The position numbers and the translations under genes were made by a program. Shown here piece by piece: positions 19,808 to 38,071 of a DNA stretch of 64,000 nt (position 1 is the first letter of the stretch; each line of letters opens with the position of its first letter). The notes under the pieces were generated by a model. The model was not told where the DNA came from and did no database searches. It saw nothing but the letters and a program-made list of their open reading frames with translations. The stretch is from Oikopleura dioica (taxonomy: Eukaryota > Animalia > Chordata): positions 10,044,001-10,108,000 of the forward strand of contig OU015566.1 in the NCBI GenBank assembly GCA_907165135.1, given 5' to 3'.

Positions 19808-20097
19808 AGTAGTATATAAATGTCAGCCTTGCCGGACGCTCTCAAGTGGAAAGCACTTGAATTCAAGTACTTTCAAGTGCCTGCACCTGGCACCTAAATA
19901 AACAAACTATTGTGACTTGTTTCCGGTCAGTAATTGTCTTGCACTTGAAGTACTTGACACCTGAACATATTCTGAGCGCGAATTTTGAAAAGACAAAGTG
20001 AGCGCACTTGCGCCAGAACCAGTTGACCGTAACCGCGAGTATAAATCCCGGTTGATAAATCAGGAGCCCCAAAGGTCGCCAAAAATTCAAAATATAA
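19808..20097 (+). repeat. Left terminal inverted repeat of the mini-Polinton (290 bp)
   Basis: Reverse complement of 23982-24271, with 3 mismatches found by eye. Confidence 0.95.
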
Positions 20098-20131
20098 GGA
20101 GAAAAAATCTTTTTTTCTAACAAAAAATACA

Positions 20132-21375
20132 ATGACTAGACCGGATCGAAAAATTGTCAAAACACATTATCCAAAGGATAATTGCTCTGAAAGGTTATCC
20201 TTTATATTTGACGCGGATCCAAATTTATGCCTCGTCAAAAACAAAATACAAATTTTCTTTACTCTTGAACTCGACGAAAAGTACATCCCGGAAAATGGTT
20301 TTGGACCAAAACAATTTTCCACAGTTGATGTCGAACTACAGAGCCAGCTTGTGAGTGCTCCACGAACTCGTGGAGACTATTATTTGAATGATTGGCTACT
20401 TAAGAAGACAAATTTCAGCGCCGAGTATATGAAAACTTTTTTTCTGACAGAAGGGTACTTTGACGATTATAACTACAGTGAACTCTCCGAATCAGCAAAA
20501 AAGAACCTCGTGAGCAGTCGTAGAAGTGGCTGTCAACGAAAAGACGGAAAATACATTTATCAATTGATGATTATTCCAACAGATGGTTTTCTTCTTGACA
20601 ATAAGCCACTGCCTCCAAATAAGGAGATGAAGCTTACACTTCGACGGCAAGATGCAAAATTTTCGACCTTGAAAATTTCGGAAAATACACCAGATCTCAC
20701 TGATGCACTCGAACTCAAGGACTGCTATGCAAAAGTTGAATACATTTCAAGCCAGCATTTGCGAACGGAGCTATTTGAACATCGCAGCATCTCCTATGTA
20801 TATGATGACTTAAATGTAATTGTCAGATCCTTGACAAAGGGCGAAAAGATAGTGAGAATGGAAAATCTTTTTGGAGGAAAAACCCCAGCATTCCTTTTTG
20901 CAGGCATCATGCCTACAAGTTGCATCGATGGTGATAACGAGGGCGAATCAATCAGTCTTACGAGAAATGATCTACTCAGCTTCGATCTAGCGATTAATGG
21001 ATCATCTTGCACGGGTTATCCTATGGTAAGATAAACAGTCCTAAAACTTGATGACTAATTTTTGGATAGAAAATTAAAGCAGACTTCCCAATCGAGCCCT
21101 ATCTGAAATATCAAGATGTCATGGGAAACTTGATGAATGTCAAAACATATAAAGTGGACTCAATTTTCGATTTCAAAAAAGCATTCCTCTTTGCGCATAA
21201 GTTCGAAGGTGAAAACGAAGAAAATTCCGGCTGGGTTAGTGCAACTCTGGAGTTCAAGGATGTTGTCGACAAAAATTTGAGCTTGGTAGTCTGGACGATA
21301 GATATGGTGAAGGTTTCTATCGACGAATATGGTCAGATTGACAAGGATATAGTAAAAAAGATTTCCTCTGCATAA
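20132..21375 (+). CDS. Polinton-type double jelly-roll major capsid protein (PY-like), 399 aa, one intron at 21026-21069
   Basis: YIPENGFGPKQFSTVDVELQSQLV...YYLNDWLLKKTNFS, FGGKTPAFLFAGIM...FDLAINGSSCTGYP and C-terminal GWVSATLEF...LSLVVWT...VSIDEYGQI resemble the Polinton PY pattern. A 44-nt GT-AG intron joins the two ORFs in frame. Confidence 0.8.
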
Positions 21376-21482
21376 GAAATAATGAATAAAATATCTTTCC
21401 GATATATTTATTTTTGATTTAGCAGTATTCTTTTTTAGGTTTTTTTCTTCTTTTTTTCTTAATTATTGGTCGATTACGTTTC

Positions 21483-21965
21483 TTATTTTTCTGATCGGTG
21501 TAAGCATCGTTTATCCCTCTTTGCCGCCAATATTGTTCTCGTTGACTCAGACTGACTGAGATGCTGGACATTTTGCTCAAGTTTCAAATTGATATAGCCA
21601 AATTTAATTTCTGGTTTAACCGATGAGTCAGAGAGCGATTCAATATCAATTTCAATTGATACGAAATCCAAATTTCTAGATCGGAGTGTATTTATAGTTT
21701 CTTGAGTTGGTTGATAATTGTATGCCCCAGAGGACATGATAAAATTAGCGAGTTGTACTTTTCCAATTGTGTCCAACAGTGATATTTTGACGTGAAAATG
21801 GTGATTTCGCGGTAAATTTTCGATAATTATTCCAGCAGAATTAAGAGAAATCTGCCAGAATGATTCCTCATTGGCAAAAAAATTTTGCCTTTCGTCGAAC
21901 AGCCATAGAGTTTTCTTATTTTGCGTTGTAAGATTTAAGATCTTTGGCAATTTTTCGTAACTCAT
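21483..21965 (-). CDS. Probable minor capsid (penton, single jelly-roll) protein, 160 aa
   Basis: First true ATG at 21965. Beta-rich pattern, with C-terminal YNYQPTQETINTLRSRNLDFVSIEIDI...YINLKLEQ resembling the Polinton penton end motif. Its position inside the element supports this. Confidence 0.55.
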   Translation of the reverse strand: MSYEKLPKILNLTTQNKKTLWLFDERQNFFANEESFWQISLNSAGIIIENLPRNHHFHVKISLLDTIGKVQLANFIMSSGAYNYQPTQETINTLRSRNLDFVSIEIDIESLSDSSVKPEIKFGYINLKLEQNVQHLSQSESTRTILAAKRDKRCLHRSEK

Positions 21966-22890
21966 AGTAGTAGAACGATCCAGATATCTTACTGTCGTTA
22001 AAATGGGACAGTTTATACCAGACAATACCAGCTTTTTGCGATATAGCTCGTATTTTGTACTCTTCTGATGACCAATTTTGTTTGTATCCTTTATCGAAAA
22101 GACTCTTTTTTCGTAAAATACGAACAATGTTCCCAACTTGTAGACGAGGTTGTGCTAATAGCTTCAAATTTGGATATAATTTCTTAAATACCAAAGGAAT
22201 ATTATCATCAGACACCTCCCTTGGGGCTATCCCCGTTGAACGGTGAGGAGTTCCATTGTAGCCACGCACAATATCAGGAAGAACGTCTATCCATATTCTT
22301 GTTTTGTTATGGCTCATGTATTTTTCGAGGCGGGATTTAAGAGTTCTGATGACTCTTTCTGCCATCGATGCCTTGGTTTTCGTTTTGATACTGTAGTGAT
22401 GGATTTGAAAAGCATCAAACAGTCGCCGCATATCAGAATTATAAAATTCTTTACCCTCATCAGTGATGACTGTATTTGGGTACTCGTTCATTTCATCAAA
22501 AATTTCTGAAAACGCAGCAGAAACAGTTTTCTGATTCTTTTTCTTCAAGGGCTTTGCCCATATATATTTTGAAAAGCAATCGATCACAATCAGAATGTAG
22601 ACATTGTTTCTATTCGCAAACTTCATCTTGCTACTACGAGTGTATTCTATCAAATCCGCCATAAAAATTTGAAATGGGTGGTTGACGATAATTCTTCTTC
22701 TTGGAAAAACTCTCTTGACGATTCTACCATGTTTGCTTTGAGTCGCATTTTTTCTCAAGAAATCATTCAATTTTGCAGAGTAAGCGGGAGTACTTTGAAT
22801 ATTTGAGTATATCTGCTCAATATTGTCATCATTACTTATTTGAGTGCCTTTATTTGCTGTCAGAGCTTTCTTTTTGTTGCGAGTTCTCAT
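21916..22890 (-). CDS. Polinton-type (retroviral-like, rve) DDE integrase, 324 aa
   Basis: MADLIE (D), YILIVIDCFSKY, VITDEGKEF (D), MAERVIRTLK (E), YNGTPHRSTGIAP, LQVGNIVRI...FDKGYKQNWS, GSFYYYEL. Confidence 0.93.
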   Translation of the reverse strand: MRTRNKKKALTANKGTQISNDDNIEQIYSNIQSTPAYSAKLNDFLRKNATQSKHGRIVKRVFPRRRIIVNHPFQIFMADLIEYTRSSKMKFANRNNVYILIVIDCFSKYIWAKPLKKKNQKTVSAAFSEIFDEMNEYPNTVITDEGKEFYNSDMRRLFDAFQIHHYSIKTKTKASMAERVIRTLKSRLEKYMSHNKTRIWIDVLPDIVRGYNGTPHRSTGIAPREVSDDNIPLVFKKLYPNLKLLAQPRLQVGNIVRILRKKSLFDKGYKQNWSSEEYKIRAISQKAGIVWYKLSHFNDSKISGSFYYYELRKIAKDLKSYNAK

Positions 22891-23078
22891 ACTTTTTTCT
22901 AAAAGCAAAGAAAGATTTGAAGATAACTCTCCACGGATAGGTTATTTTTGCTTTTATGCCACAAGAACAACGGATTTTTCTCGATTGATTTGTCATTGAA
23001 ATAAAAAACACAAACAATCTTTGATAAATCAAATTTTAAGAAGCTCAGGGGCATTTATTTCACGTAAAGTAATCAGAG

Positions 23079-23954
23079 TCAGTAATCACTTTCTGAGCTT
23101 GTTGTTGAATCATCACTGGATTTGTCAGAGGAAGACTGATATCTTTTCCTCTTATTCGCTTGGTCTGCAGACTTCTTTTTAAGCTTCTTAACAGTCGCAT
23201 GAAAAGTTGGCTGCTTTGAATTGTATTTTTCTTTGATCTCAAAAAATCGCCGAAAATCATTTTCACTGATAATGTAAGATTTCATTCCGTTCACTGAAAA
23301 GCATTTGGGATACTCGCTAAATATATCCGTGAAAAGACGATAGTTTGATCGATGAGCCTGAGGGGAAAGATTAATCACATAGAATGGATATTTTTCGAAT
23401 TTCGAATCTTCTTCTGCAGCTTTATACGCTTCAGTTAGTCCAACAGCTCGACATCTTCGTAAATTTATTGACGCATCCAGACAATTACGAGTAAGAACTT
23501 GCATATTACAGCTGTTACCAATGTCACGTGCATATTTTCCTTTTGAATAGCTGTTTTGAGTCATTATCATCACACTAAGATTTCTCTTCCCAGATGTGAC
23601 TCTGAACAGATGATCGATGCATTCGGAGTTGGCTGCTTTATCATAGAGATCGTCGAGAATAAGAAGTGTGTGGCTTTCAAGTGAATCAATGTCGTCTTGA
23701 GTCGGTAAACCAACTGTAAATTGTATTGGAATGGATATTTTATCGCTTTCGTCCCAATCAACTGGTTTTTCTTTCAAGTATTTCGGATAGCAATAAATTA
23801 TTCGTCTCGGTTCATTTTCAAATAAGTCGAAATTTTCACAAAGTTTACCAGCCACATGAGTTTTGCCAGATTGTGATGATCCAGAAAAAAGGATTCTGAA
23901 AGGATAAGGAAATCTTAAATCCTTGCACACTTCTCCAGATATTGATAAACTCAT
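23079..23954 (-). CDS. A32/FtsK-HerA family DNA packaging ATPase, 291 aa
   Basis: YPFRILFSGSSQSGKT (Walker A), LLILDDL (Walker B), SVMIMTQN, RDIGNSCN, YPFYVINL. Confidence 0.9.
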   Translation of the reverse strand: MSLSISGEVCKDLRFPYPFRILFSGSSQSGKTHVAGKLCENFDLFENEPRRIIYCYPKYLKEKPVDWDESDKISIPIQFTVGLPTQDDIDSLESHTLLILDDLYDKAANSECIDHLFRVTSGKRNLSVMIMTQNSYSKGKYARDIGNSCNMQVLTRNCLDASINLRRCRAVGLTEAYKAAEEDSKFEKYPFYVINLSPQAHRSNYRLFTDIFSEYPKCFSVNGMKSYIISENDFRRFFEIKEKYNSKQPTFHATVKKLKKKSADQANKRKRYQSSSDKSSDDSTTSSESDY

Positions 23955-23981
23955 TTAATTATTTCTCTGCTTTTGGACTGT

Positions 23982-24271
23982 TTATATTTTGCATTTTTGG
24001 TGACCTTTGGGGCTCCTGATTTATCAACCGGGATTTATACTCGCGGTTACGGTCAACTGGTTCTGGCGCAAGTGCGCTCACTTTGTATTTTCAAAATTCG
24101 CGCTCAGAATATGTTCAGGTGTCAAGTACTTCAAGTGCAAGACAATTACTGACCGGAAACAAGTCACAATAGTTTGTTTATTTAGGTGCCAGGTGCAGGC
24201 ACTTGAAAGTACTTGAATTCAAGTGCTTTCCACTTGAGAGCGTCCGGCAAGGCTGACATTTATATACTACT
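23982..24271 (-). repeat. Right terminal inverted repeat of the mini-Polinton (290 bp)
   Basis: Reverse complement of 19808-20097. Confidence 0.95.
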
Positions 24272-28125: not shown

Positions 28126-31100
28126 TCAATCAGACGATTTTACATAGAGAAGATGAATGTCCATCACGTTCGTAAATGTGAGCCTTCTATTGGGTACAAA
28201 AGATATAAATCTATCAATAGCATAAATTAAATGAACCAATAGATTGAGAATCTAATTGAATATCAATGTATTGTGATGTTCCCTTCCCCAGTTCGGACAT
28301 GTCTGTGAGGAGCATGCTTCTTGAAGTAGTTGTAGCTATCGGACTTTTCTAGGAAAGATCTGGCGAGCTCGATAGCACCGTCGCGCGCGCCGTCATTTGC
28401 GCCGCAAAAGCGCCACTGACATCACAGGGACCATCTGAAGGTGGCGTTAGAAAGATCGTTAGCCCTATAAATTGCTCCGGAAATGAAAACATTCCACTAC
28501 GAAAGGAAAACGAATACTAAAGACGAAAGAAATTCAAAAACATAAAAAGGCAATCAACAACGACTTTAATCCTTCTCACTTTACTTCCCAAAATAGCGGC
28601 TGTTTTCAAAGGCCATGATCTGATGGAAATGGTGCGACTTTGCTACGCAAATCAAGAACATCATGAGTGCAAACTAATTCGCGACAAAGTCCCCTATACC
28701 TCCCAATACTCGCCACGCTTGCATCGTACACGAAGTTACTCGAATTGCGAGCACGAGTGCTGTGGCTGTCAGTTGGAATCGCTATGGTTGAGTCCCCAAG
28801 TCCTTGTCCAGGCGTATGGACTTGCTATTGAAGAGAGTGAAAGGTAGTGATCATTCAAATCAATTTCTACGAGTTGACAAAAAATTCGTTGATTCAAAAT
28901 TTACGAAAAGTCTTTTCATAATAAAAATATCAGTATTCTTTGAGTCATTTTAAAATTAGTTCAAAAATTAAAGATATATTTTTCTTTGTAAACCTGACAC
29001 ATTCTGAATGTGACATTCAGACTCTGCAGGTAGTCATTTAGAGCTTTCTGGGTACTTAGGTCCTATTTGAGCGTACACCAGTTTGTCTTGACATATTGAT
29101 ATTTAAACTAAAAGTCGAAACGTCAGCACGCTGAACAAGGACGTCCCCGCAAATGTTGATATTTACAAAAATCCTTCCAACATACGTAATGTACAACGTC
29201 AATGTAGGCATTTTAAAATTCAAATAATCTGACATCACTAATTTTATGACTAAAGCTTAAGACCTGTGAATGAATTTTTATGAAATTTTCAGCGTCTACA
29301 TAGAAAGCGTTGACGGAAGCAAACACAATCTCCAATTAATTGACATTGGCTACTGCAAGGGACAATGTCACTCCCCGTAAGTTATTTAATCCATCAATTC
29401 TCCGAGAATTATTAGAAATTCTAGGCACAGAAGACACGACCTGTTTCACTGCTCAGCTACCGAGCATCAAGTGATAAGGATCGTCTACTACACAGGAAGA
29501 AATCCTACACGAACTGAGCTAGTCATTGCCGGATTAAAAATAAAAAAATGTTACTGTAAAGCAAGAATTTCTTGCGAATAATCTCCGAGCACTATTATTC
29601 TTTAGCATACTCCATGCAGCACAGGCTATGCTGCATACGCATTAATTGTCCCTATGTAAATAAAATGATAAGACGAACCTTGTCCATCAGTTCCAGCAGA
29701 TAAGAACTCCACATTTAGCTTTCCTTGAGCTTCAATTTCAAAAGCCAGTGCGAGTTCTTGATTTCTTCCTCCTCTCCCGTTCCCAAGGATAGTCACAGTA
29801 GGTTCACCGCCGGCAATTACGAGAACTTCGCCATTTTCATCGAAAATGTCGCGTATTTCTTCGAAAAAGTCAGAGACGTCAGGAGTAGTTATCTGGAGGT
29901 TAGAAAAATCTGGAATGCTGCTCCGATTACTCCTGTCAGCAAGAGCTTTCGCAATCCAAACGTAGAACTTGGCGAGATCACGGGCTTCCCCGGAAATTTC
30001 GTTTCCAAGAGAGAAGTAAGGAATCGGTCTGCGGTTTGATTGAGAAGTATCCAATAAAACGATCCTTACCTATCAGATACTTTTCCCTGAGCACATATTT
30101 CCTCGATTCGTTTAATTAGTACTTGATTATTGCCGATAACTTCAACCGTATTCGAGGGATAAGTCTTCTGATTGAAAATTTCCTCAGGAAGGGCAAAGTC
30201 AACATCAAATTTTCTTTAGAATCGAGGATTTTAAAAGAGGATCATCAGAATTAAATATGCGCCATATATGGCTAATATAATTTGAGGCTAAAATTTTGAG
30301 CTGAATTCATATATTGATTTTAAATCCTGTCTCAGCAACCCTTCATAAAAGCTCCGATCTTTTATTGTTGTTTCAACAGTTGGTCCAGACGCGATCAATT
30401 CGACCGGGTCGCCAATGATATCCGAGAGAATAAAAGTTCTCACAGAAGCTTTTGTCGCTGCCAAAAGCCTTCCTCCTTTCGTCTTGCTCAAAAGTGATCT
30501 TACAGCGTTGAGTTCTTGAATAGTAGCGCCCTAAAAGTTCAACTAAATTATATAGGAAGTTTATGTATAGGAACCTTTGATTGAAGCTTTTTGATAATTC
30601 TTAATTTCTCATCAAGCGATATCGAATCAGCAGGGCAAGCTAAACACGCGCTACCGCCGCCAGAACAGCAAACTATCAGCTTGTCGTCTGGTTCGAGATT
30701 CTTCACGAACTCAAGAATCTTGTTCGATGCGTCTTTTCGTCAATGGTTCTCCATCTAAGCGTTTTTTCGACGAATCACCAGTCGAAGAACGCATATTCTA
30801 TCGTTTTTGAACCAATGCCCACAGCAGCTGCGTCTGGAAGGTTGTTTTCCGCGACTTCAAGGACTTTGACATTTTCGTGAACGGGCCACATACTCGATCG
30901 TTCAGAAAATGCACCCGCATTTTCTTCTAAAATTCATTGACACACGAAACGATAGAGCAGTAGCTTACCCATGGATTTTCTAGTTCCGAAAGGCACTGAG
31001 ACGATCCCTTGGGCGACATAATCTCCAAAGTACTCGATTACTCCACTTGCCATACCAGCAGCAGCTTTCCCGAAGCCGATGAGGAAGACTTTTTCTTTGG

Positions 31101-31191
31101 CGAAAGATTTTCTTGTAAGATGATCCAAAACGAGCGTTTTCGGATTGATTGAGGGCAACGATTCGCGAAAAATATCCTCAAGAATTACCAT
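28126..31191 (-). CDS. GLYCTK: Glycerate kinase (MOFRL family); one apparent frameshift near 28382-28409
   Basis: [42 protein letters not shown]...[16 protein letters not shown]|[26 protein letters not shown] 1,244-nt intron spans 28435-29678. Confidence 0.88.
28623..29581 (+). CDS. Cystine-knot (TGF-beta/hormone-like) small protein nested antisense in a GLYCTK intron
   Basis: Exons 28623-28843, 29293-29376 and 29425-29581 splice in frame via GT-AG (153 aa): ...ECCGCQL...[13 protein letters not shown]...[15 protein letters not shown]...KIKKCYC. 5' end uncertain. Confidence 0.55.
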
Positions 31192-31194
31192 GGC

Positions 31195-34100
31195 TAGGGT
31201 AAACGCACAAAAAAACTAACTTTTTCCCTCGAAAGAGTATTGACTTGAAACTTGGCATGGTGATAGATCATGCCAAAGTACTTTTCAAAATTTTTTTTTC
31301 AAAAAAATTTTTCAAGGTTTTCAACCTTTTTAAGCCTGGCAAAAGGCTAACTTTTGAGTGGATCATGTTCGAAGGCTCTAAAATAGCTAGATCAACGCGG
31401 AATGATCTCCTGATCATTTTCATAAAAAAAAATTTAGTGACAATACCTCCGATGACTCAAGAATTGCCGAAAACTGTTACGTAACCCTATTATGTAACAC
31501 AAATTCAGACTAATAATTTCTGGAGGACCAAAGAAATAAATCTAACTATTTTTCAACCCCTAAAAGTAATAATATTTTCCATCCCTTTTTCTGGAGGAGC
31601 TCGCGGAAGACTTTTTCAAGGAAAACATTGCATTGCTGGAAAAAATTTTTTTTTTTGAAAAAAAAATTAATTTTCGAATGAAATAAACAGAAAAAATCTT
31701 GATCATAACCTTAATAAAAACTACCTTCTTTAAAAAAAAACAAAAAAAAAATTCCAAATAACGAACACCATAAAAGCAAAACAAGTAGGGAGGGTATGCT
31801 TAAAGTAAAAAATGGGAGAGGGTGGGGTTGGGGACAAAACTGAGACTGATCACCTTAGTACTGCCTTCTTATCCCGGCCTTTGTCAAGCCCATTTCAATT
31901 TAAAAGCCAGGGACGGGGCTGAGACGGCCCGAAGGGCCGTCAAGCCCATTTCAATTTAAAAGCCAGGGACGGGGCTGAGACGGCCCGAAGGGCCGTCAAG
32001 CCCATTTCAATTTAAAAGCCACGGGACGGGGCTGAGACGGCCCGAAGGGCCGTCAAGCCCATTTCAATTTAAAAGCCAGGACGGGGCTGAGACGGCCCGA
32101 AGGGCCGTCAAGCCCATTTCAATTTAAAAGCCAGGGACGGGGCTGAGACGGCCCGAAGGGCCGTCAAGCCCATTTCAATTTAAAAGCCAGGACGGGGCTG
32201 AGACGGCCCGAAGGGCCGTCAAGCCCATTTCAATTTAAAAGCCAGGGACGGGGCTGAGACGGCCCGAAGGGCCGTCAAGCCCATTTCAATTTAAAAGCCA
32301 GGGACGGGGCTGAGACGGCCCGAAGGGCCGTCAAGCCCATTTCAATTTAAAAGCCAGGGACGGGGCTGAGACGGCCCGAAGGGCCGTCAAGCCCATTTCA
32401 ATTTAAAAGCCAGGGACGGGGCTGAGACGGCCCGAAGGGCCGTCAAGCCCATTTCAATTTAAAAGCCAGGGACGGGGCTGAGACGGCCCGAAGGGCCGTC
32501 AAGCCCATTTCAATTTAAAAGCCAGGGACGGGGCTGAGACGGCCCGAAGGGCCGTCAAGCCCATTTCAATTTAAAAGCCAGGGACGGGGCTGAGACGGCC
32601 CGAAGGGCCGTCAAGCCCATTTCAATTTAAAAGCCACGGGGCTGAGACGGCCCGGGTCAAGCTGAGACGGCCCCGAAGGGCCGTCAAGCCCATTTCAATT
32701 TAAAAGCCAGGGACGGGGCTGAGACGGCCCGAAGGGCCGTCAAGCCCATTTCAATTTAAAAGCCAGGGACGGGGCTGAGACGGCCCGAAGGGCCGTCAAG
32801 CCCATTTCAATTTAAAAGCCAGGGACGGGGCTGAGACGGCCCGAAGGGCCGTCAAGCCCATTTCAATTTAAAAGCCAGGGACGGGGCTGAGACGGCCCGA
32901 AGGGCCGTCAAGCCCATTTCAATTTAAAAGCCAGGGACGGGGCTGAGACGGCCCGAAGGGCCGTCAAGCCCATTTCAATTTAAAAGCCAGGGACGGGGCT
33001 GAGACGGCCCGAAGGGCCGTCAAGCCCATTTCAATTTAAAAGCCAGGGACGGGGCTGAGACGGCCCGAAGGGCCGTCAAGCCCATTTCAATTTAAAAGCC
33101 AGGGACGGGGCTGAGACGGCCCGAAGGGCCGTCAAGCCCATTTCAATTTAAAAGCCAGGACGGGGCTGAGACGGCCCGAAGGGCCGTCAAGCCCATTTCA
33201 ATTTAAAAGCCAGGGACGGGGCTGAGACGGCCCGAAGGGCCGTCAAGCCCATTTCAATTTAAAAGCCAGGGACGGGGCTGAGACGGCCCGAAGGGCCGTC
33301 AAGCCCATTTCAATTTAAAAGCCAGGGACGGGGCTGAGACGGCCCGAAGGGCCGTCAAGCCCATTTCAATTTAAAAGCCAGGGACGGGGCTGAGACGGCC
33401 CGAAGGGCCGTCAAGCCCATTTCAATTTAAAAGCCAGGGACGGGGCTGAGACGGCCCGAAGGGCCGTCAAGCCCATTTCAATTTAAAAGCCAGGGACGGG
33501 GCTGAGACGGCCCGAAGGGCCGTCAAGCCCATTTCAATTTAAAAGCCAGGGACGGGGCTGAGACGGCCCGAAGGGCCGTCAAGCCCATTTCAATTTAAAA
33601 GCCAGGGACGGGGCTGAGACGGCCCGAAGGGCCGTCAAGCCCATTTCAATTTAAAAGCCAGGGACGGGGCTGAGACGGCCCGAAGGGCCGTCAAGCCCAT
33701 TTCAATTTAAAAGCCAGGGACGGGGCTGAGACGGCCCGAAGGGCCGTCAAGCCCATTTCAATTTAAAAGCCAGGGACGGGGCTGAGACGGCCCGAAGGGC
33801 CGTCAAGCCCATTTCAATTTAAAAGCCAGGGACGGGGCTGAGACGGCCCGAAGGGCCGTCAAGCCCATTTCAATTTAAAAGCCAGGGACGGGGCTGAGAC
33901 GGCCCGAAGGGCCGTCAAGCCCATTTCAATTTAAAAGCCAGGGACGGGGCTGAGACGGCCCGAAGGGCCGTCAAGCCCATTTCAATTTAAAAGCCAGGGA
34001 CGGGGCTGAGACGGCCCGAAGGGCCGTCAAGCCCATTTCAATTTAAAAGCCAGGGACGGGGCTGAGACGGCCCGAAGGGCCGTCAAGCCCATTTCAATTT

Positions 34101-35209
34101 AAAAGCCAGGGACGGGGCTGAGACGGCCCGAAGGGCCGTCAAGCCCATTTCAATTTAAGGGACGGGGCTGAGACGGCCCGAAGGGCCGTCAAGCCCATTT
34201 CAATTTAAAAGCCAGGGACGGGGCTGAGACGGCCCGAAGGGCCGTCAAGCCCATTTCAATTTAAAAGCCAGGGACGGGGCTGAGACGGCCCGAAGGGCCG
34301 TCAAGCCCATTTCAATTTAAAAGCCAGGGACGGGGCTGAGACGGCCCGAAGGGCCGTCAAGCCCATTTCAATTTAAAAGCCAGGGACGGGGCTGAGACGG
34401 CCCGAAGGGCCGTCAAGCCCATTTCAATTTAAAAGCCAGGGACGGGGCTGAGACGGCCCGAAGGGCCGTCAAGCCCATTTCAATTTAAAAGCCAGGGACG
34501 GGGCTGAGACGGCCCGAAGGGCCGTCAAGCCCATTTCAATTTAAAAGCCAGGGACGGGGCTGAGACGGCCCGAAGGGCCGTCAAGCCCATTTCAATTTAA
34601 AAGCCAGGGACGGGGCTGAGACGGCCCGAAGGGCCGTCAAGCCCATTTCAATTTAAAAGCCAGGGACGGGGCTGAGACGGCCCGAAGCCCATTTTTAAAA
34701 ATTTTATCAAAAATTTCTTATTAAAAAAAATAAAATTCTTAATTTTGAATTCTTCCATCATCCGGATGTTTTCAACCGGACAAAGTCCTCCAGAAGTTCT
34801 CTGTGTGATCACGTGATATTTGTCAATAAATTTTATAAAAAATTTAGGATTTTGTTTACTAAATAACAAAAATCATTATTCTTCCAGCAAATTACTGGTC
34901 TTCCAGCAAGAAACAGGAGGTCCTCCAGGTGATTCCTGATCGATCAGAGGCATGGTCACTAAATTTTTTTATCTCAAATTGATTAGAATTTCGAGGCGCT
35001 TCGAACTAGACTATCCACGACTCCGTACCTTCACCCACTCGAAAGATAGATTTTTGGACCTCTTTAGAGGGCGCTAGAATGATGCCAAGTGGTTTTTTCA
35101 AAAATTTTTTTTCTGAAATAGTATTTTCTCATGTTTTGCAATCACGTCACTTAAAATAAAGTTTCTACGACCCCTAGAAAAAAAGCTGATTTTTTGTGCG
35201 TTTACCCTA
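31195..35209. mobile_element. Non-autonomous hAT-type DNA transposon (4,015 bp) carrying a satellite array
   Basis: Perfect 20-bp TIR TAGGGTAAACGCACAAAAAA (imperfect to ~31 bp); 8-bp direct repeat ACCATGGC at 31187-31194 and 35210-35217. No transposase ORF. Confidence 0.88.
31883..34694 (+). repeat. 56-bp tandem repeat, ~50 near-identical copies
   Basis: Unit GTCAAGCCCATTTCAATTTAAAAGCCAGGGACGGGGCTGAGACGGCCCGAAGGGCC, with period 56 (e.g. 32221 to 32277). A few indel variants near 32021, 32081, 32631-32680 and 34158. Confidence 0.98.
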
Positions 35210-35299
35210 ACCATGGCGGCAATTTTTCAATCTAGGAACACAAAGATAATTATAAATATGTATACATAAGTGGGCTTTTTTCAATTCAGAATATACCGC

Positions 35300-38071
35300 A
35301 TTGGTATGATTTACAATAAGTGAGTGTTTCAGTGAACTTAGGATAAATGAGATTGTATCTGTAGAAGATAGGCAGTGCCACAGTGTTGCTGGGTCTTTAA
35401 TTTCTTGCTTTTCGTTTTCGGCTTTTTCAGGTTTACCAAAATGGATTAACGAGTAAGTTTCTCTCCTTTACAAATCTTTTTTGATGTCTATTGATGGGTA
35501 GCGGCCGCGCTAGTTCACGATCGGTTGGTTAACAAGTTCGAAAAGTGACTCAATGAAAATTGATAACCTCAAAAATGAGTTTCCCTATCAAACCAGGACC
35601 ATTCATTTGATGCAGATCGTGAGCCAGGTTTACAATTGTGAACCTGGACGCCCTAAACCTATCTTGCTTGATAAATCCTTTCCTTGGAACTAAAGCTTGA
35701 ACCTTCGGAACTGGAGGAGGGCTGTTCGGCTGTGCTCGAAAATGGACGGGCTTCGTGTTGCTATTTCTACGAGCTTTCTTCACGAGATTGGGGACCTCCA
35801 TAAGGTCCTCATCAATGATGAATTCGTCGGAAGCGTCAGACATACCATCGCTGAGCGGCAAGTTCGCGGTATCAATAACTGGCGAGTTGCGGAAAGGCTG
35901 GTCGATATGATTGTCAATGTCAACGTAAAGAGAATCAGGAGGTGTTTTTTCCTCTTCAGCGGATGACTCTTCCTGTACATTTGCTATTTATGGCTTACTT
36001 TTTAATTTCTTCCATCATTTATAACTAATAAATTATAAACAATCAGGAAATAAAGAAGAGCGGAAAGAATTCCGTGGCAGTAAAATATTTTATTCAGATA
36101 TTATTTGAACAGTGCGAAAATGAAAAAGGGCTGATAAATTTATTATCAGATGAAGAATTCTAATTCAGGTAGTTCTTGCATCTCAAAGCTCTTGCTTCCC
36201 GACTAATCTTATACGAAGCTCTACTTCGAATGCCTCTAAATCGTAAGCCTCTAACTTGAGTGCAGAGATTTTCTTCGGCACTCTGCGGTGGAGTCCCCGC
36301 CTCCCCTGGAGGTTTTTTCTCATCATCGGCGGCTGTTTCTGGCTCCTTGTCGCCTTCGCTCGAATTCGGCTCATCGACGAGAGTCGTGTCATTCTCGTCG
36401 TTTTCTTCTGGAATCTTTTCGTTTGCTCGCTGTTTTTCTGCATCAGCTTTTCAAAGGTTTTCAAAGTTGCCGTTTTACTGCTATATTTCATGAAAGAATG
36501 ACGTGATATGCAAGTTTTAACCTTCCCGAAAAGATCGTCATCGTAATCGTAATCAAACTCGTCCTTATTTTCCCAATCAATCATTCCTTCTTTATTCGCT
36601 GAAAAGTTTGAGACTTCCGACGAAGCGAGCGACTCTTCATCAATATCGAACGGAGCTTGAAACTCGGTTTCTTCTGCCATTCGCTCATTCATTTCTTCAT
36701 TCGTTTCTTCTTTCTCTGGCTCGTTCTGGCATTCTTCATCGTCATCCTCGTTTCGTTCGTACCAGTCTTCCGATCTACGTGCTTCTTTGAGTCGCTCGTC
36801 TGAGTTTTCAAGCGCGTAGTCTTTCTTGATAGCCGCCATATAATTTGTCTCTCTAAAAAGGATGAAGTCAGCTATAAAATGGCGAGTTTTTCTCAACCTG
36901 TGTCGAATATGTTCGCCGAACATCCCGAACTCCTGGACCCGAAACGTATTCCAATCTTTTAATTTCAAGAGCTGCGATCCAAGAACCTTTCTTTTCTTGT
37001 TATCAAACTTAGCAGCCTCCAAAGAATGATGAATCAGTTCCATGAAGCGCTGCCCTCCCTCGTCGCTCAAATGGACATTATCGACGTACACTTCTTCTCC
37101 TTCAACAGGGCTTTTTTGCTCGATCTGGCTTTTGCGATACATATATTCTTTTAGAGCATTTTCTCCGTCGTTTTGAAAGTAGAAGTCTGTGGAGAAATCG
37201 ATGACCTTGACCATTTCATCGTCCGTCATCTCTGTATTCACATACACAGCTTCAAGCAATTTCAGGAAAAAAAACTCATCGAATAAGACATACCGACAAT
37301 CTTGTTGCACTCAACCGCTCGTAGATGATCTTCGTCGAGTCTAGGGAGAATCGAGCTAACGAAAATCATCGCTGCTGGGTAGAGCTTTCGAACCATGTAG
37401 ATGCATTCGATGATTTCCTGGGCACATTCGGATACAGTAGACTTAACGCGTGATTGGGAGGCGTTATTTGTGCCAACATGAAGTAGAATTGTTCCGACTC
37501 GACGGGGCTAAAAATAATAATTCGAAGATTTTTGAAAATGTAGGATTACCGGGGGAAGATATTCTGACTTCAACGCTTCAACCAGTCCTTCCGCTCTGAT
37601 TCCCGGGTAGGAGAACGCGAAAAAATCCTTTAGTGGAACAGTATCCATGTAATATATACAGGACTTAAGCATACTGTCTCCAATTAGCAACGCTCCTTCA
37701 GGAACATCATGCTCTTCATCTGGGGATTCAGGAGAATCTCTCCGGCCATCGTTGTAGCTTGAATTTTGATGACCACGATTGAATCCAGAGCCTTGGTCGC
37801 TATATCGAGGTCTTCCTCGAGATCTGTTGTCATTTCGAGATGATCCATTGCCATAGGATTCTCTTTGTCGTGGTCTGAAATCAACGTCTCTCTGTCGACT
37901 TTCAAATCTGGATGGAACTGCGTCGTATTTCGCCTTTTCAGCGTCATATCTATTCCGACGATCCGGGGTCACGGGCGACGAACGCTCTGGATTGGTGATT
38001 TGACTGTCGAGAACTTGAGAAACGGCGGGTTTCGATCGACGAGCTCGACTTTTAGCGAGATTTTGAGTCAT
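35300..38071 (-). CDS. SGNH/GDSL hydrolase-domain protein with Arg/Gly-rich N-terminus and long acidic C-terminus; 3' end approximate
   Basis: After splicing: LLIGDSM (block I), SYPG (II), ILLHVGTNN (III), VSSILPRLD, YVDNVHLSDEG (V). Confidence 0.7.

What the first reader, a model, noticed from the sequence alone, without database searches (positions are those of the whole stretch)
31187..35233. hAT-type element inserted exactly at the GLYCTK start codon, duplicating the ATG and creating a new splice acceptor
Seen (minus strand): the original context TTCCTAG|ATTGAAAAATTGCCGCC-ATG-GT now lies at 35233-35210, 4 kb from the coding sequence. The 8-bp TSD contains the ATG, so a second ATG at 31191 still heads the ORF. 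The TIR/TSD junction reads TTTTTTGTGCGTTTACCCTAG|CC-ATG, a new pyrimidine-rich AG 2 nt before that ATG. The other TIR offers a donor, AGG|GTAAAC. Inference: trans-splicing at the new AG would rescue normal GLYCTK. Cis-splicing the element out would leave an out-of-frame uORF (ATG GTT AGG CCA TGG TAA) in a strong Kozak context and reduce expression. The insertion also splits a likely operon.
Basis: partly seen in the sequence, partly recalled or inferred. Interest (0 to 1): 0.75.

Follow-up and report, generated by a model that had tools for sequence, protein, structure and literature searches.

The report
Transposon inserted at glycerate kinase start codon
A 4-kb non-coding cut-and-paste transposon sits exactly in the start-codon context of the only glycerate kinase gene in the Okinawan Oikopleura dioica reference genome; it is an ordinary, probably young insertion allele whose effect on the gene cannot be settled without RNA data.

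Summary
The element spans 31195-35209 (4015 bp). It has perfect 20-bp terminal inverted repeats (TIRs), TAGGGTAAACGCACAAAAAA, and a perfect 8-bp target-site duplication (TSD), GCCATGGT on the minus strand. The TSD contains the ATG of the single-copy DUF4147+MOFRL glycerate kinase gene (GLYCTK).

The element has no transposase. Its core is about 50 copies of a 56-bp minisatellite.

The genome is Oikopleura dioica (Okinawa reference), not a nematode. It does use spliced-leader (SL) trans-splicing.

Twelve family copies all have perfect 8-bp TSDs with a central AT (target nnYATRnn). A C-ATG-G start context is therefore a preferred target, and the insertions look young.

- **hAT-type:** supported by structure only. 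No matching transposase was found, and the target pattern fits neither the Ac nor the Buster type.
- **Rescue by trans-splicing at the new AG:** untested. That AG lacks the usual following A and is paired with an upstream donor.
- **Operon:** not supported. The upstream stop lies 335 nt before the original ATG.
- **Second possible lesion:** exon 7 needs a 1-nt frame change in this assembly.

The most likely reading is a hypomorphic or null allele that is still polymorphic.

The parts
31195..35209 (-). Non-autonomous hAT-like transposon, 4015 bp
   Evidence: Bounded by perfect 20-bp TIRs and an 8-bp TSD. No ORF longer than 93 codons. Both ends match 4 other full copies in the genome at 81-89% identity.
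35190..35209 (-). TIR at the gene-upstream end. On the minus strand it reads TAGGGTAAAC..., and the GT at 35205-35204 is a potential 5' splice site (AGG|GTAAAC).
31195..31214 (+). TIR at the gene-proximal end. On the minus strand it reads ...GTTTACCCTA. Its final A plus the first G of the TSD make the AG at 31195-31194.
35210..35217 (-). Upstream TSD copy GCCATGGT. Its ATG (35214-35212) sits in the old GCCGCC-ATG-G context and now opens a short frame running into the element.
31187..31194 (-). Downstream TSD copy GCCATGGT. Its ATG (31191-31189) heads the glycerate kinase ORF.
31883..34687 (.). Internal minisatellite: 56-bp unit, 49.9 copies, 95% matches, with a GC-rich hairpin in each unit
   Evidence: Arrays of the same 55-57-bp unit (6-43 copies) occur in most other family copies examined; none was detected in L024.
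35232..35233 (-). AG of the candidate original trans-splice acceptor CCTAG|A, 17 nt before the old ATG
   Evidence: Sequence. It fits the 'AG usually followed by A' rule (PMC6389100). Its use is inferred, not shown.
28126..31191 (-). Single-copy glycerate kinase gene (DUF4147 + MOFRL). Exons: E1 31191-30969, E2 30926-30813, E3 30732-30575, E4 30530-30340, E5 30213-30070, E6 30028-29679, E7 from 28434, last exon from about 28186 to the stop at 28128-28126.
   Evidence: E1-E6 have GT-AG introns and consistent phases.
28349..28434 (-). Exon 7 stretch in which homology switches reading frame by 1 nt
   Evidence: tblastn of two bacterial homologues places residues 359-384 in one frame (ending at 28361) and residues 385-397 in another (starting at 28361). 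The first frame ends in TAG at 28351-28349.
35550..35974 (-). Probable last exon of the upstream same-strand gene (no Pfam family), stop TGA at 35552-35550
   Evidence: It lies 335 nt before the original ATG. There is no AATAAA in between and one ATTAAA near 35401.

Best explanation
A young insertion of a non-autonomous, hAT-like cut-and-paste transposon with a hairpin minisatellite as cargo landed in the start-codon context of the single glycerate kinase gene of Oikopleura dioica (Okinawa reference).

The family inserts into 8-bp targets of the form nnYATRnn. The sequence GC-CATG-GT around the ATG was therefore a good target, and the staggered cut duplicated the ATG together with its -3 to +5 context.

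Shown:
- the element, its family and the target rule;
- the identity, single-copy status and true start of the gene.

Inferred:
- The insertion moves the old promoter and the old AG|A acceptor 4 kb away from the coding sequence.
- Transcripts from the old promoter then carry a strong upstream ATG plus the element.
- If the element is cut out through AGG|GTAAAC ... CCCTAG|, a 5-codon overlapping uORF remains.
- The allele is therefore most likely weak or null. It was probably heterozygous in the sequenced male (3.6% heterozygosity, merged haplotypes) and is still polymorphic.
- Loss of function would be compatible with the frame break in exon 7, if that break is real.
For: - Element and TSD.
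- Family: 10 exact TIR ends and about 20 variants in the genome.
- Twelve complete copies each have a perfect 8/8 TSD with AT at positions 4-5 (12/12), Y at position 3 (11/12) and R at position 6 (10/12). Zero mismatches in 96 compared TSD positions bounds divergence since insertion at about 3%.
- Copies differ by 11-30% from each other yet keep their TIRs.
- No transposase in the element.
- Gene: the only DUF4147 and MOFRL matches in the genome. Start.
- Species: 64.3 Mb in 19 scaffolds and 53 exact copies of the O. dioica SL 3' 25-mer.
- Heterozygosity and haplotype merging.
- uORF arithmetic. Acceptor rule. Frame break.
Against: - No RNA, read-level or population data could be reached, so neither expression nor zygosity is known.
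- Exons 1-6 are intact, which fits a gene still in use.
- The pyrimidine-rich CCCTAG 2 nt before the ATG, and other AGs within 30 nt with no upstream ATG, could serve as acceptors and give a normal protein.
- The exon 7 frame break may be a Nanopore or polishing error. [quoted passage not shown]
Confidence: 0.6

Rival explanations
1. Transcription runs through or starts in the element. The SL is trans-spliced to the new AG at 31195-31194 (or to an AG a few tens of nt upstream). The element is discarded as an outron and normal glycerate kinase is made.
For: - The genome has the O. dioica SL genes, and 39% of genes are trans-spliced.
- The T-rich run before CCCTAG is there.
- 2 of the 6 GT-AG introns of this gene (E1-E6) end in TAG, and the tentative seventh acceptor would too.
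- There is no ATG between 31258 and 31191.
- Exons 1-6 are intact.
Against: - Trans-splice AGs are usually followed by A; here the next base is C.
- For transcripts from the old promoter, the AG is paired with the donor-like AGG|GTAAAC, which favours cis-splicing.
- No promoter inside the element is known.
- Exon 7 has a frame break.
Confidence: 0.2
2. The element behaves as a new 4012-nt intron at the 5' end, spliced AGG|GTAAAC ... CCCTAG|. This leaves the overlapping uORF MVRPW*. Splicing to the next AG (TTCTTGAG|G at 31178-31177) would instead give an in-frame product starting MVR-DIFRESL.
For: - The arithmetic was checked.
- The gene's own donors are loose (GTAAGC, GTTCAA, GTTCCT, GTTGCT, GTAAGG, GTTCGT) and so are its acceptors, so the TIR sites are no worse.
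- The gene already has a 1244-nt intron.
Against: - Median intron length in this genome is 49 nt.
- The AG arises by chance from the TSD base: 7 of 24 junction orientations in the family have one.
- There is no RNA support.
- Earlier follow-ups in this genome judged similar cases no better than chance.
Confidence: 0.15
3. Assembly artefact: the element was misplaced here by the long-read assembly or by haplotype merging.
For: The assembly is Nanopore-based with merged haplotypes. Repeat number in the 2.8-kb array is likely imprecise.
Against: A perfect 8-bp TSD flanks perfect TIRs, and removing the element restores a continuous start context with an in-frame upstream stop. That is the signature of transposition, not of a misjoin.
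Confidence: 0.03

Closest known systems
Non-autonomous hAT elements and hAT MITEs such as Mar and BuT2-derived copies in Drosophila (PMC3517528, PMC3942097)
   Same: Short conserved TIRs, 8-bp TSDs that are identical within a copy but differ between copies, no coding capacity, and low to moderate copy number.
   Different: This element is 4 kb with a 2.8-kb hairpin minisatellite inside. Its target consensus is nnYATRnn, not the Buster nnnTAnnn. No parent element with a transposase was found.
Maize Ac/Ds insertions removed from transcripts through splice sites in the Ds ends (from my own knowledge of work by Wessler and colleagues; not checked here)
   Same: A hAT-type element within a transcribed region whose terminal sequence offers a donor site, so that most of the element can be spliced out, leaving a small scar.
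   Different: Here the site is the start codon of an animal gene in a species with SL trans-splicing. No RNA evidence exists, and the scar would create an overlapping uORF.
Introners, transposons that generate introns on insertion (PMC12130899, PMC11282704)
   Same: One splice site comes from the element end and the other is completed by the target duplication.
   Different: Introners are many near-identical copies sitting as introns in genes. This family has about a dozen to twenty diverged copies, and the AG forms only when the TSD happens to start with G.
Outron removal by SL trans-splicing in O. dioica (PMC6389100)
   Same: Sequence upstream of an unpaired AG is discarded. This could remove a 5' insertion together with its upstream ATGs.
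   Different: The new AG is followed by C rather than the usual A, and it has a potential upstream donor. Its use is unproven.

Membership tests
hAT transposon superfamily | 8-bp target-site duplication | tested here: met
   8/8 identical TSD at this copy and at 11 other complete copies. Definition from PMC3517528 and PMC3942097.
hAT transposon superfamily | Short TIRs (5-27 bp) that start YARNG, with overall length of about 2.5-5 kb | tested here: met
   20-bp perfect TIR starting TAGGG; element 4015 bp. The YARNG motif is from my own knowledge.
hAT transposon superfamily | Mobilised by a transposase with a hAT dimerisation domain (a cognate autonomous element) | tested here: inconclusive
   No ORF longer than 93 codons in the element. 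None of the 9 PF05699 matches in the genome lies at a family copy; the seven strongest, as far as examined (L031, L032), belong to a family with a different TIR (CAGGGTGTCAAATCG) and different subterminal repeats. Long ORFs in related copies are a nested retroelement-like ORF or satellite read-through.
hAT families Ac / Buster | Target consensus nTnnnnAn (Ac) or nnnTAnnn (Buster) | tested here: not met
   All 12 TSDs have AT, not TA, at positions 4-5, and there is no T2/A7 rule. The Buster consensus is; the Ac consensus is from my own knowledge.
Glycerate kinase of the MOFRL type (GLYCTK) | N-terminal DUF4147 domain followed by a MOFRL domain | tested here: met
   DUF4147 positions 2-222 lie on exons 1-4 and MOFRL positions 2-49 on exon 6. 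The C-terminal motifs lie on exon 7 and the last exon by tblastn with two bacterial glycerate kinases.
Glycerate kinase of the MOFRL type (GLYCTK) | Uninterrupted reading frame | tested here: inconclusive
   E1-E6 are in phase. Exon 7 needs a 1-nt frame change. This could be a real lesion or an assembly indel.
O. dioica operon | Intercistronic distance of at most about 60 bp, with an SL acceptor at the downstream gene | tested here: not met
   The criterion is from PMC7986045. The upstream stop at 35552-35550 is 317 nt from the old AG and 335 nt from the old ATG. The poly(A) site is unknown, so a long 3' UTR could still shorten the gap.
O. dioica SL trans-splice acceptor | Unpaired AG, usually followed by A | tested here: not met
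   The new site is CCCTAG|C, with a donor-like AGG|GTAAAC 4 kb upstream. The old site CCTAG|A fits. Actual use is not testable with these tools.
Introner | Many near-identical copies that form introns in unrelated genes | tested here: not met
   About 31 TIR ends in the genome with up to 2 mismatches. Copies are only 70-89% alike.

The most novel reading that the evidence does not exclude
The transposon end plus the TSD has created a working acceptor 2 nt before the duplicated ATG. SL trans-splicing (or splicing of the element as a new 5' intron) then makes a 4-kb insertion at a start codon nearly neutral. Because the family targets nnYATRnn, it would be biased towards Y-ATG-R start contexts. 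That would make this a natural example of leader trans-splicing buffering transposon hits at gene starts.
Probability: 0.15. Interest if true: 0.55.

Novelty: new member of a known kind. Interest (0 to 1): 0.3.

Why it matters
The locus is a ready-made natural allele for asking how a trans-splicing chordate handles a large insertion between promoter and start codon: trans-splicing, cis-splicing or loss of expression. It could be settled with RNA-seq of the kind already made for the Okinawan strain. It also documents a low-copy, satellite-carrying hAT-like family with a strict central-AT target rule, in a genome whose repeat content is dominated by LTR retrotransposons (PMC4350176). As a single insertion allele without expression data, it is otherwise ordinary.

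Tried and rejected
- **Nematode origin.** Rfam SL1 and SL2 gave nothing (only 50 candidates were scored, so this is weak). The assembly size and the O. dioica SL sequence settle the species.
- **Autonomous partner.** No long ORF lies in the element or in most copies. The L023 ORF has only a weak GIY-YIG hit and the L029 ORFs are satellite read-through. The L030 ORFs are retroelement gag/protease. The seven strongest hAT-domain loci, as far as examined (L031, L032), belong to another family; the two weaker ones (C3:1689025, C3:1859826) are not at any family copy.
- **Empty-site test.** An exact look-up of the exon-1 ORF found no record. Two metagenome scans were empty.
- **Exon 7 frame break.** Pfam on short pieces gave nothing. 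The word search with the exon-7 piece found nothing.
- **Intron 6 as a second transposon.** It is single-copy and has no TIRs.
Full report
**1. What is in the sequence**

On the minus strand, the text from 35240 downwards reads ...TGTTCCTAG ATTGAAAAATTGCC GCCATGGT, followed by TAGGGTAAACGCACAAAAAA. About 4 kb further on, the reverse complement of that 20-mer is followed by GCCATGGT AATTCTTGAGG....

- The 20-mer occurs exactly twice in the window, in inverted orientation, at 31195-31214 and 35190-35209. With up to three mismatches allowed, 0.02 matches are expected by chance.
- The eight bases outside each repeat are identical: ACCATGGC on the plus strand, at 31187-31194 and 35210-35217.
- The element is therefore 31195-35209, 4015 bp.
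- It has further imperfect inverted homology between its subterminal parts.
- It has no open frame above 93 codons.
- Its core is 49.9 copies of a 56-bp unit at 31883-34687.

This includes the AG at 31195-31194, the GT at 35205-35204 and the product of joining them, ATG GTT AGG CCA TGG TAA.

**2. Whose genome**

- The assembly has 64,281,565 bases in 19 contigs, with largest pieces of 17.09 and 16.16 Mb. This matches the published OKI2018_I69 assembly of Oikopleura dioica from Okinawa: 64.3 Mb, 19 scaffolds, longest 17.1 Mb, N50 16.2 Mb (PMC8008620).
- The last 25 bases of the O. dioica spliced leader, taken from PMC6883708, occur 53 times exactly. They often sit in close inverted pairs and never on the 2.9-Mb contig. 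The assembly paper describes SL/5S genes in just this way.

The organism is therefore a tunicate that does use SL trans-splicing and operons. Nothing here is human.

**3. The gene**

Pfam DUF4147 and MOFRL each match the genome only at this locus, so the gene is single-copy.

I searched the gene exon by exon, by reference.

| Exon | Coordinates (minus strand) | Evidence |
|---|---|---|
| E1 | 31191-30969 | DUF4147 positions 2-77 at residues 4-71 |
| E2 | 30926-30813 | no Pfam match on its own; junction and phase checked |
| E3 | 30732-30575 | DUF4147, continued |
| E4 | 30530-30340 | DUF4147, continued |
| E5 | 30213-30070 | no Pfam match on its own; junction and phase checked |
| E6 | 30028-29679 | MOFRL positions 2-49 |
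| E7 | from 28434 | tblastn with bacterial homologues |
| last exon | about 28186 to stop at 28128-28126 | read by eye: [11 protein letters not shown] against the TGTNV-D C-terminal motif of the Paracoccus homologue |

The E1-E6 junctions are all GT-AG with consistent phases.

The C-terminal part was located with two bacterial glycerate kinases fetched from plasmid records. After a 1244-nt single-copy intron, exon 7 begins [10 protein letters not shown]... at 28434. The last exon ends ...[17 protein letters not shown], with the stop at 28128-28126.

There is one anomaly. Within exon 7 the homology changes frame by one base. One frame carries ...[15 protein letters not shown] and then runs into TAG at 28351-28349. 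The other frame carries [13 protein letters not shown] from 28361. No plausible intron explains this. [quoted passage not shown]

**4. Is this ATG the start?**

Four lines of evidence say yes.

- In the rebuilt empty site, the codons before the ATG read TGA AAA ATT GCC GCC. An in-frame stop therefore lies 15 nt upstream, with no AG in between.
- In the present allele, an in-frame TAG lies at 31218-31216 with no ATG after it.
- The conserved domain begins at residue 4. Residue 6 aligns with residue 25 of the tagged Thermotoga structure 2B8N, and residue 3 aligns with residue 13 of a Deinococcus enzyme.
- The word search returned two 138-aa ORFs from ENA contigs of a related lineage. They are 86% identical over the 85-aa exon-1 ORF used as query, and both begin [25 protein letters not shown], identical for the first 25 residues.

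**5. The element family**

- Both ends of the element match four other complete copies at 81-89% identity, and further subfamilies at about 70%.
- The exact TIR occurs at 10 places, and 31 places match with up to two mismatches. The reversed control pattern matches once.
- I extracted twelve complete copies. Each has its own perfect 8-bp duplication: ACCATGGC, CTCATATG, GATATTGG, GATATTCG, TCTATATC, TATATGAT, AATATAGG, AATATGAC, TCTATGGT, ATAATATA, CTTATGGC and GCCATAGA.
- All twelve have AT at positions 4-5. Eleven have a pyrimidine at position 3 and ten a purine at position 6. The target is thus nnYATRnn. At an AT dinucleotide frequency near 0.09, twelve out of twelve is far beyond chance.

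Two inferences follow.

- C-ATG-G is a preferred target. A hit that straddles a start codon and duplicates it is therefore less of a coincidence than it looks.
- There are no mismatches among 96 compared TSD positions, which bounds divergence since insertion at roughly 3%. Yet the copies differ from each other by 11-30% while keeping identical TIRs. The insertions are therefore young relative to the age of the family, and in an animal with 3.6% heterozygosity they are likely to be polymorphic.

Most copies examined carry arrays of the same 55-57-bp hairpin unit (6-43 copies elsewhere, 50 here; none was detected in L024). This agrees with earlier notes of this scan on the same family.

**6. Is it hAT?**

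The structural criteria are met: an 8-bp TSD, a 20-bp TIR beginning TAGGG and a length of 4 kb (definitions in PMC3517528 and PMC3942097). No transposase could be tied to the family.

- The element and most copies have no long ORF.
- One copy holds a nested 843-aa frame with only a weak GIY-YIG hit.
- A related end lies next to retroelement gag/protease frames.
- None of the genome's nine hAT-dimerisation matches lies at a family copy; the seven strongest, as far as examined (L031, L032), belong to a family with TIR CAGGGTGTCAAATCG, TSD GTGTTAGC and GAAGGGATCGC subterminal repeats. This element lacks all of these.
- The target consensus differs from the Buster type nnnTAnnn and from the Ac type.

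I therefore call it hAT-like by structure, with family placement open.

**7. Consequences for the gene (inference)**

In O. dioica, trans-splice sites are unpaired AGs, usually followed by A (PMC6389100).

- The old context CCTAG|ATTGAAAA, 17 nt before the ATG, fits that rule. It is a reasonable candidate for the original acceptor, although a plain transcription start cannot be excluded.
- That site and the promoter now lie 4 kb upstream.
- A transcript from there carries GCCGCC-ATG-G followed by the element.
- The element's end offers a donor-like AGG|GTAAAC. The far junction offers CCCTAG|, whose G comes from the TSD.
- The gene's own six introns use equally loose sites, so removal of a 4012-nt intron is possible. 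It would leave the 5-codon uORF overlapping the main ATG, so the main ORF would depend on leaky scanning.
- Use of the next AG (31178-31177) would instead give an in-frame MVR-DIFRESL....

Trans-splicing to the new AG would give a normal protein. However, that AG is followed by C, and for upstream-initiated transcripts it is paired rather than unpaired. It would be the natural fate only of transcripts that start inside the element, and no evidence for such transcripts exists.

Across the family, an AG forms at 7 of 24 junction orientations, about what base composition predicts. The splice-like ends are therefore not a designed property.

Earlier follow-ups in this genome reached the same view for other transposons sitting in exons. 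I did not re-test those.

**8. Operon claim**

The nearest upstream same-strand coding exon (about 35974-35550, no Pfam family) stops 335 nt before the old ATG. No AATAAA lies in between. O. dioica operons are called at gaps of at most 60 bp, with a median of about 31 bp (PMC7986045). An operon would require an unusually long 3' UTR. I rate it unlikely, though not excluded.

**9. What could not be done**

- Metagenome scans found nothing.
- No reads, RNA data or alternative haplotype are reachable with these tools.
- The large profile search was not used.

**10. Verdict**

This is a real, cleanly defined insertion of a hAT-like, satellite-bearing, non-autonomous transposon at the start codon of the single glycerate kinase gene of O. 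dioica. It is most likely a young and polymorphic weak or null allele.

Its mechanistic reading is possible but unsupported in its favoured form (trans-splice rescue), and the operon part is not supported. The case is a new member of a known kind and mainly useful as a test locus.

Noticed in passing
window 28349-28434 (minus strand): Exon 7 of the glycerate kinase gene needs a 1-nt frame change between the [10 protein letters not shown]... frame and the [13 protein letters not shown] frame. This is either an assembly indel or a second inactivating lesion.
   Followed up: partly
window 28435-29678: Intron 6 of the gene is 1244 nt in a genome with a median intron of 49 nt. It is single-copy and has no terminal inverted repeats.
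   Followed up: yes
L027:3568-3909 (G000:C1, copy at about 15330314-15333466): Another family copy has the TSD TCTATGGT. Its ATG opens a 113-codon frame in the flank, with GTAAGC after codon 31. This may be a second insertion at a start codon. No Pfam family was found.
   Followed up: partly
window 31883-34687 versus L021, L023, L025, L037: With each element in the same orientation, the hairpin loop of the satellite unit reads GAA in some copies and TTC in others, as if the small palindrome had flipped.
   Followed up: no
L023:2351-4879 (G000:C4:8244978-8249728 copy): One family copy contains an 843-codon open frame with only a weak GIY-YIG match. It may be a nested Penelope-like retroelement.
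   Followed up: partly
L032:1493-7566 and L031 (G000:C5 near 13.84 Mb; C1 0.63-0.74 Mb): A separate hAT family carries the dimerisation domain. It has TIR CAGGGTGTCAAATCG, TSD GTGTTAGC and GAAGGGATCGC subterminal repeats, and is present in at least seven near-identical copies, some 4.9 kb apart.
   Followed up: partly
P0001, P0002 (ENA contigs of 1125 and 916 bp): Two ORFs from a related Oikopleura lineage read through intron 1 of the gene in frame. This shows the same N-terminus and about 92% identity in exon 1.
   Followed up: partly
window 19808-24271: Earlier notes of the scan flag a Polinton-like element here. I did not examine it.
   Followed up: no
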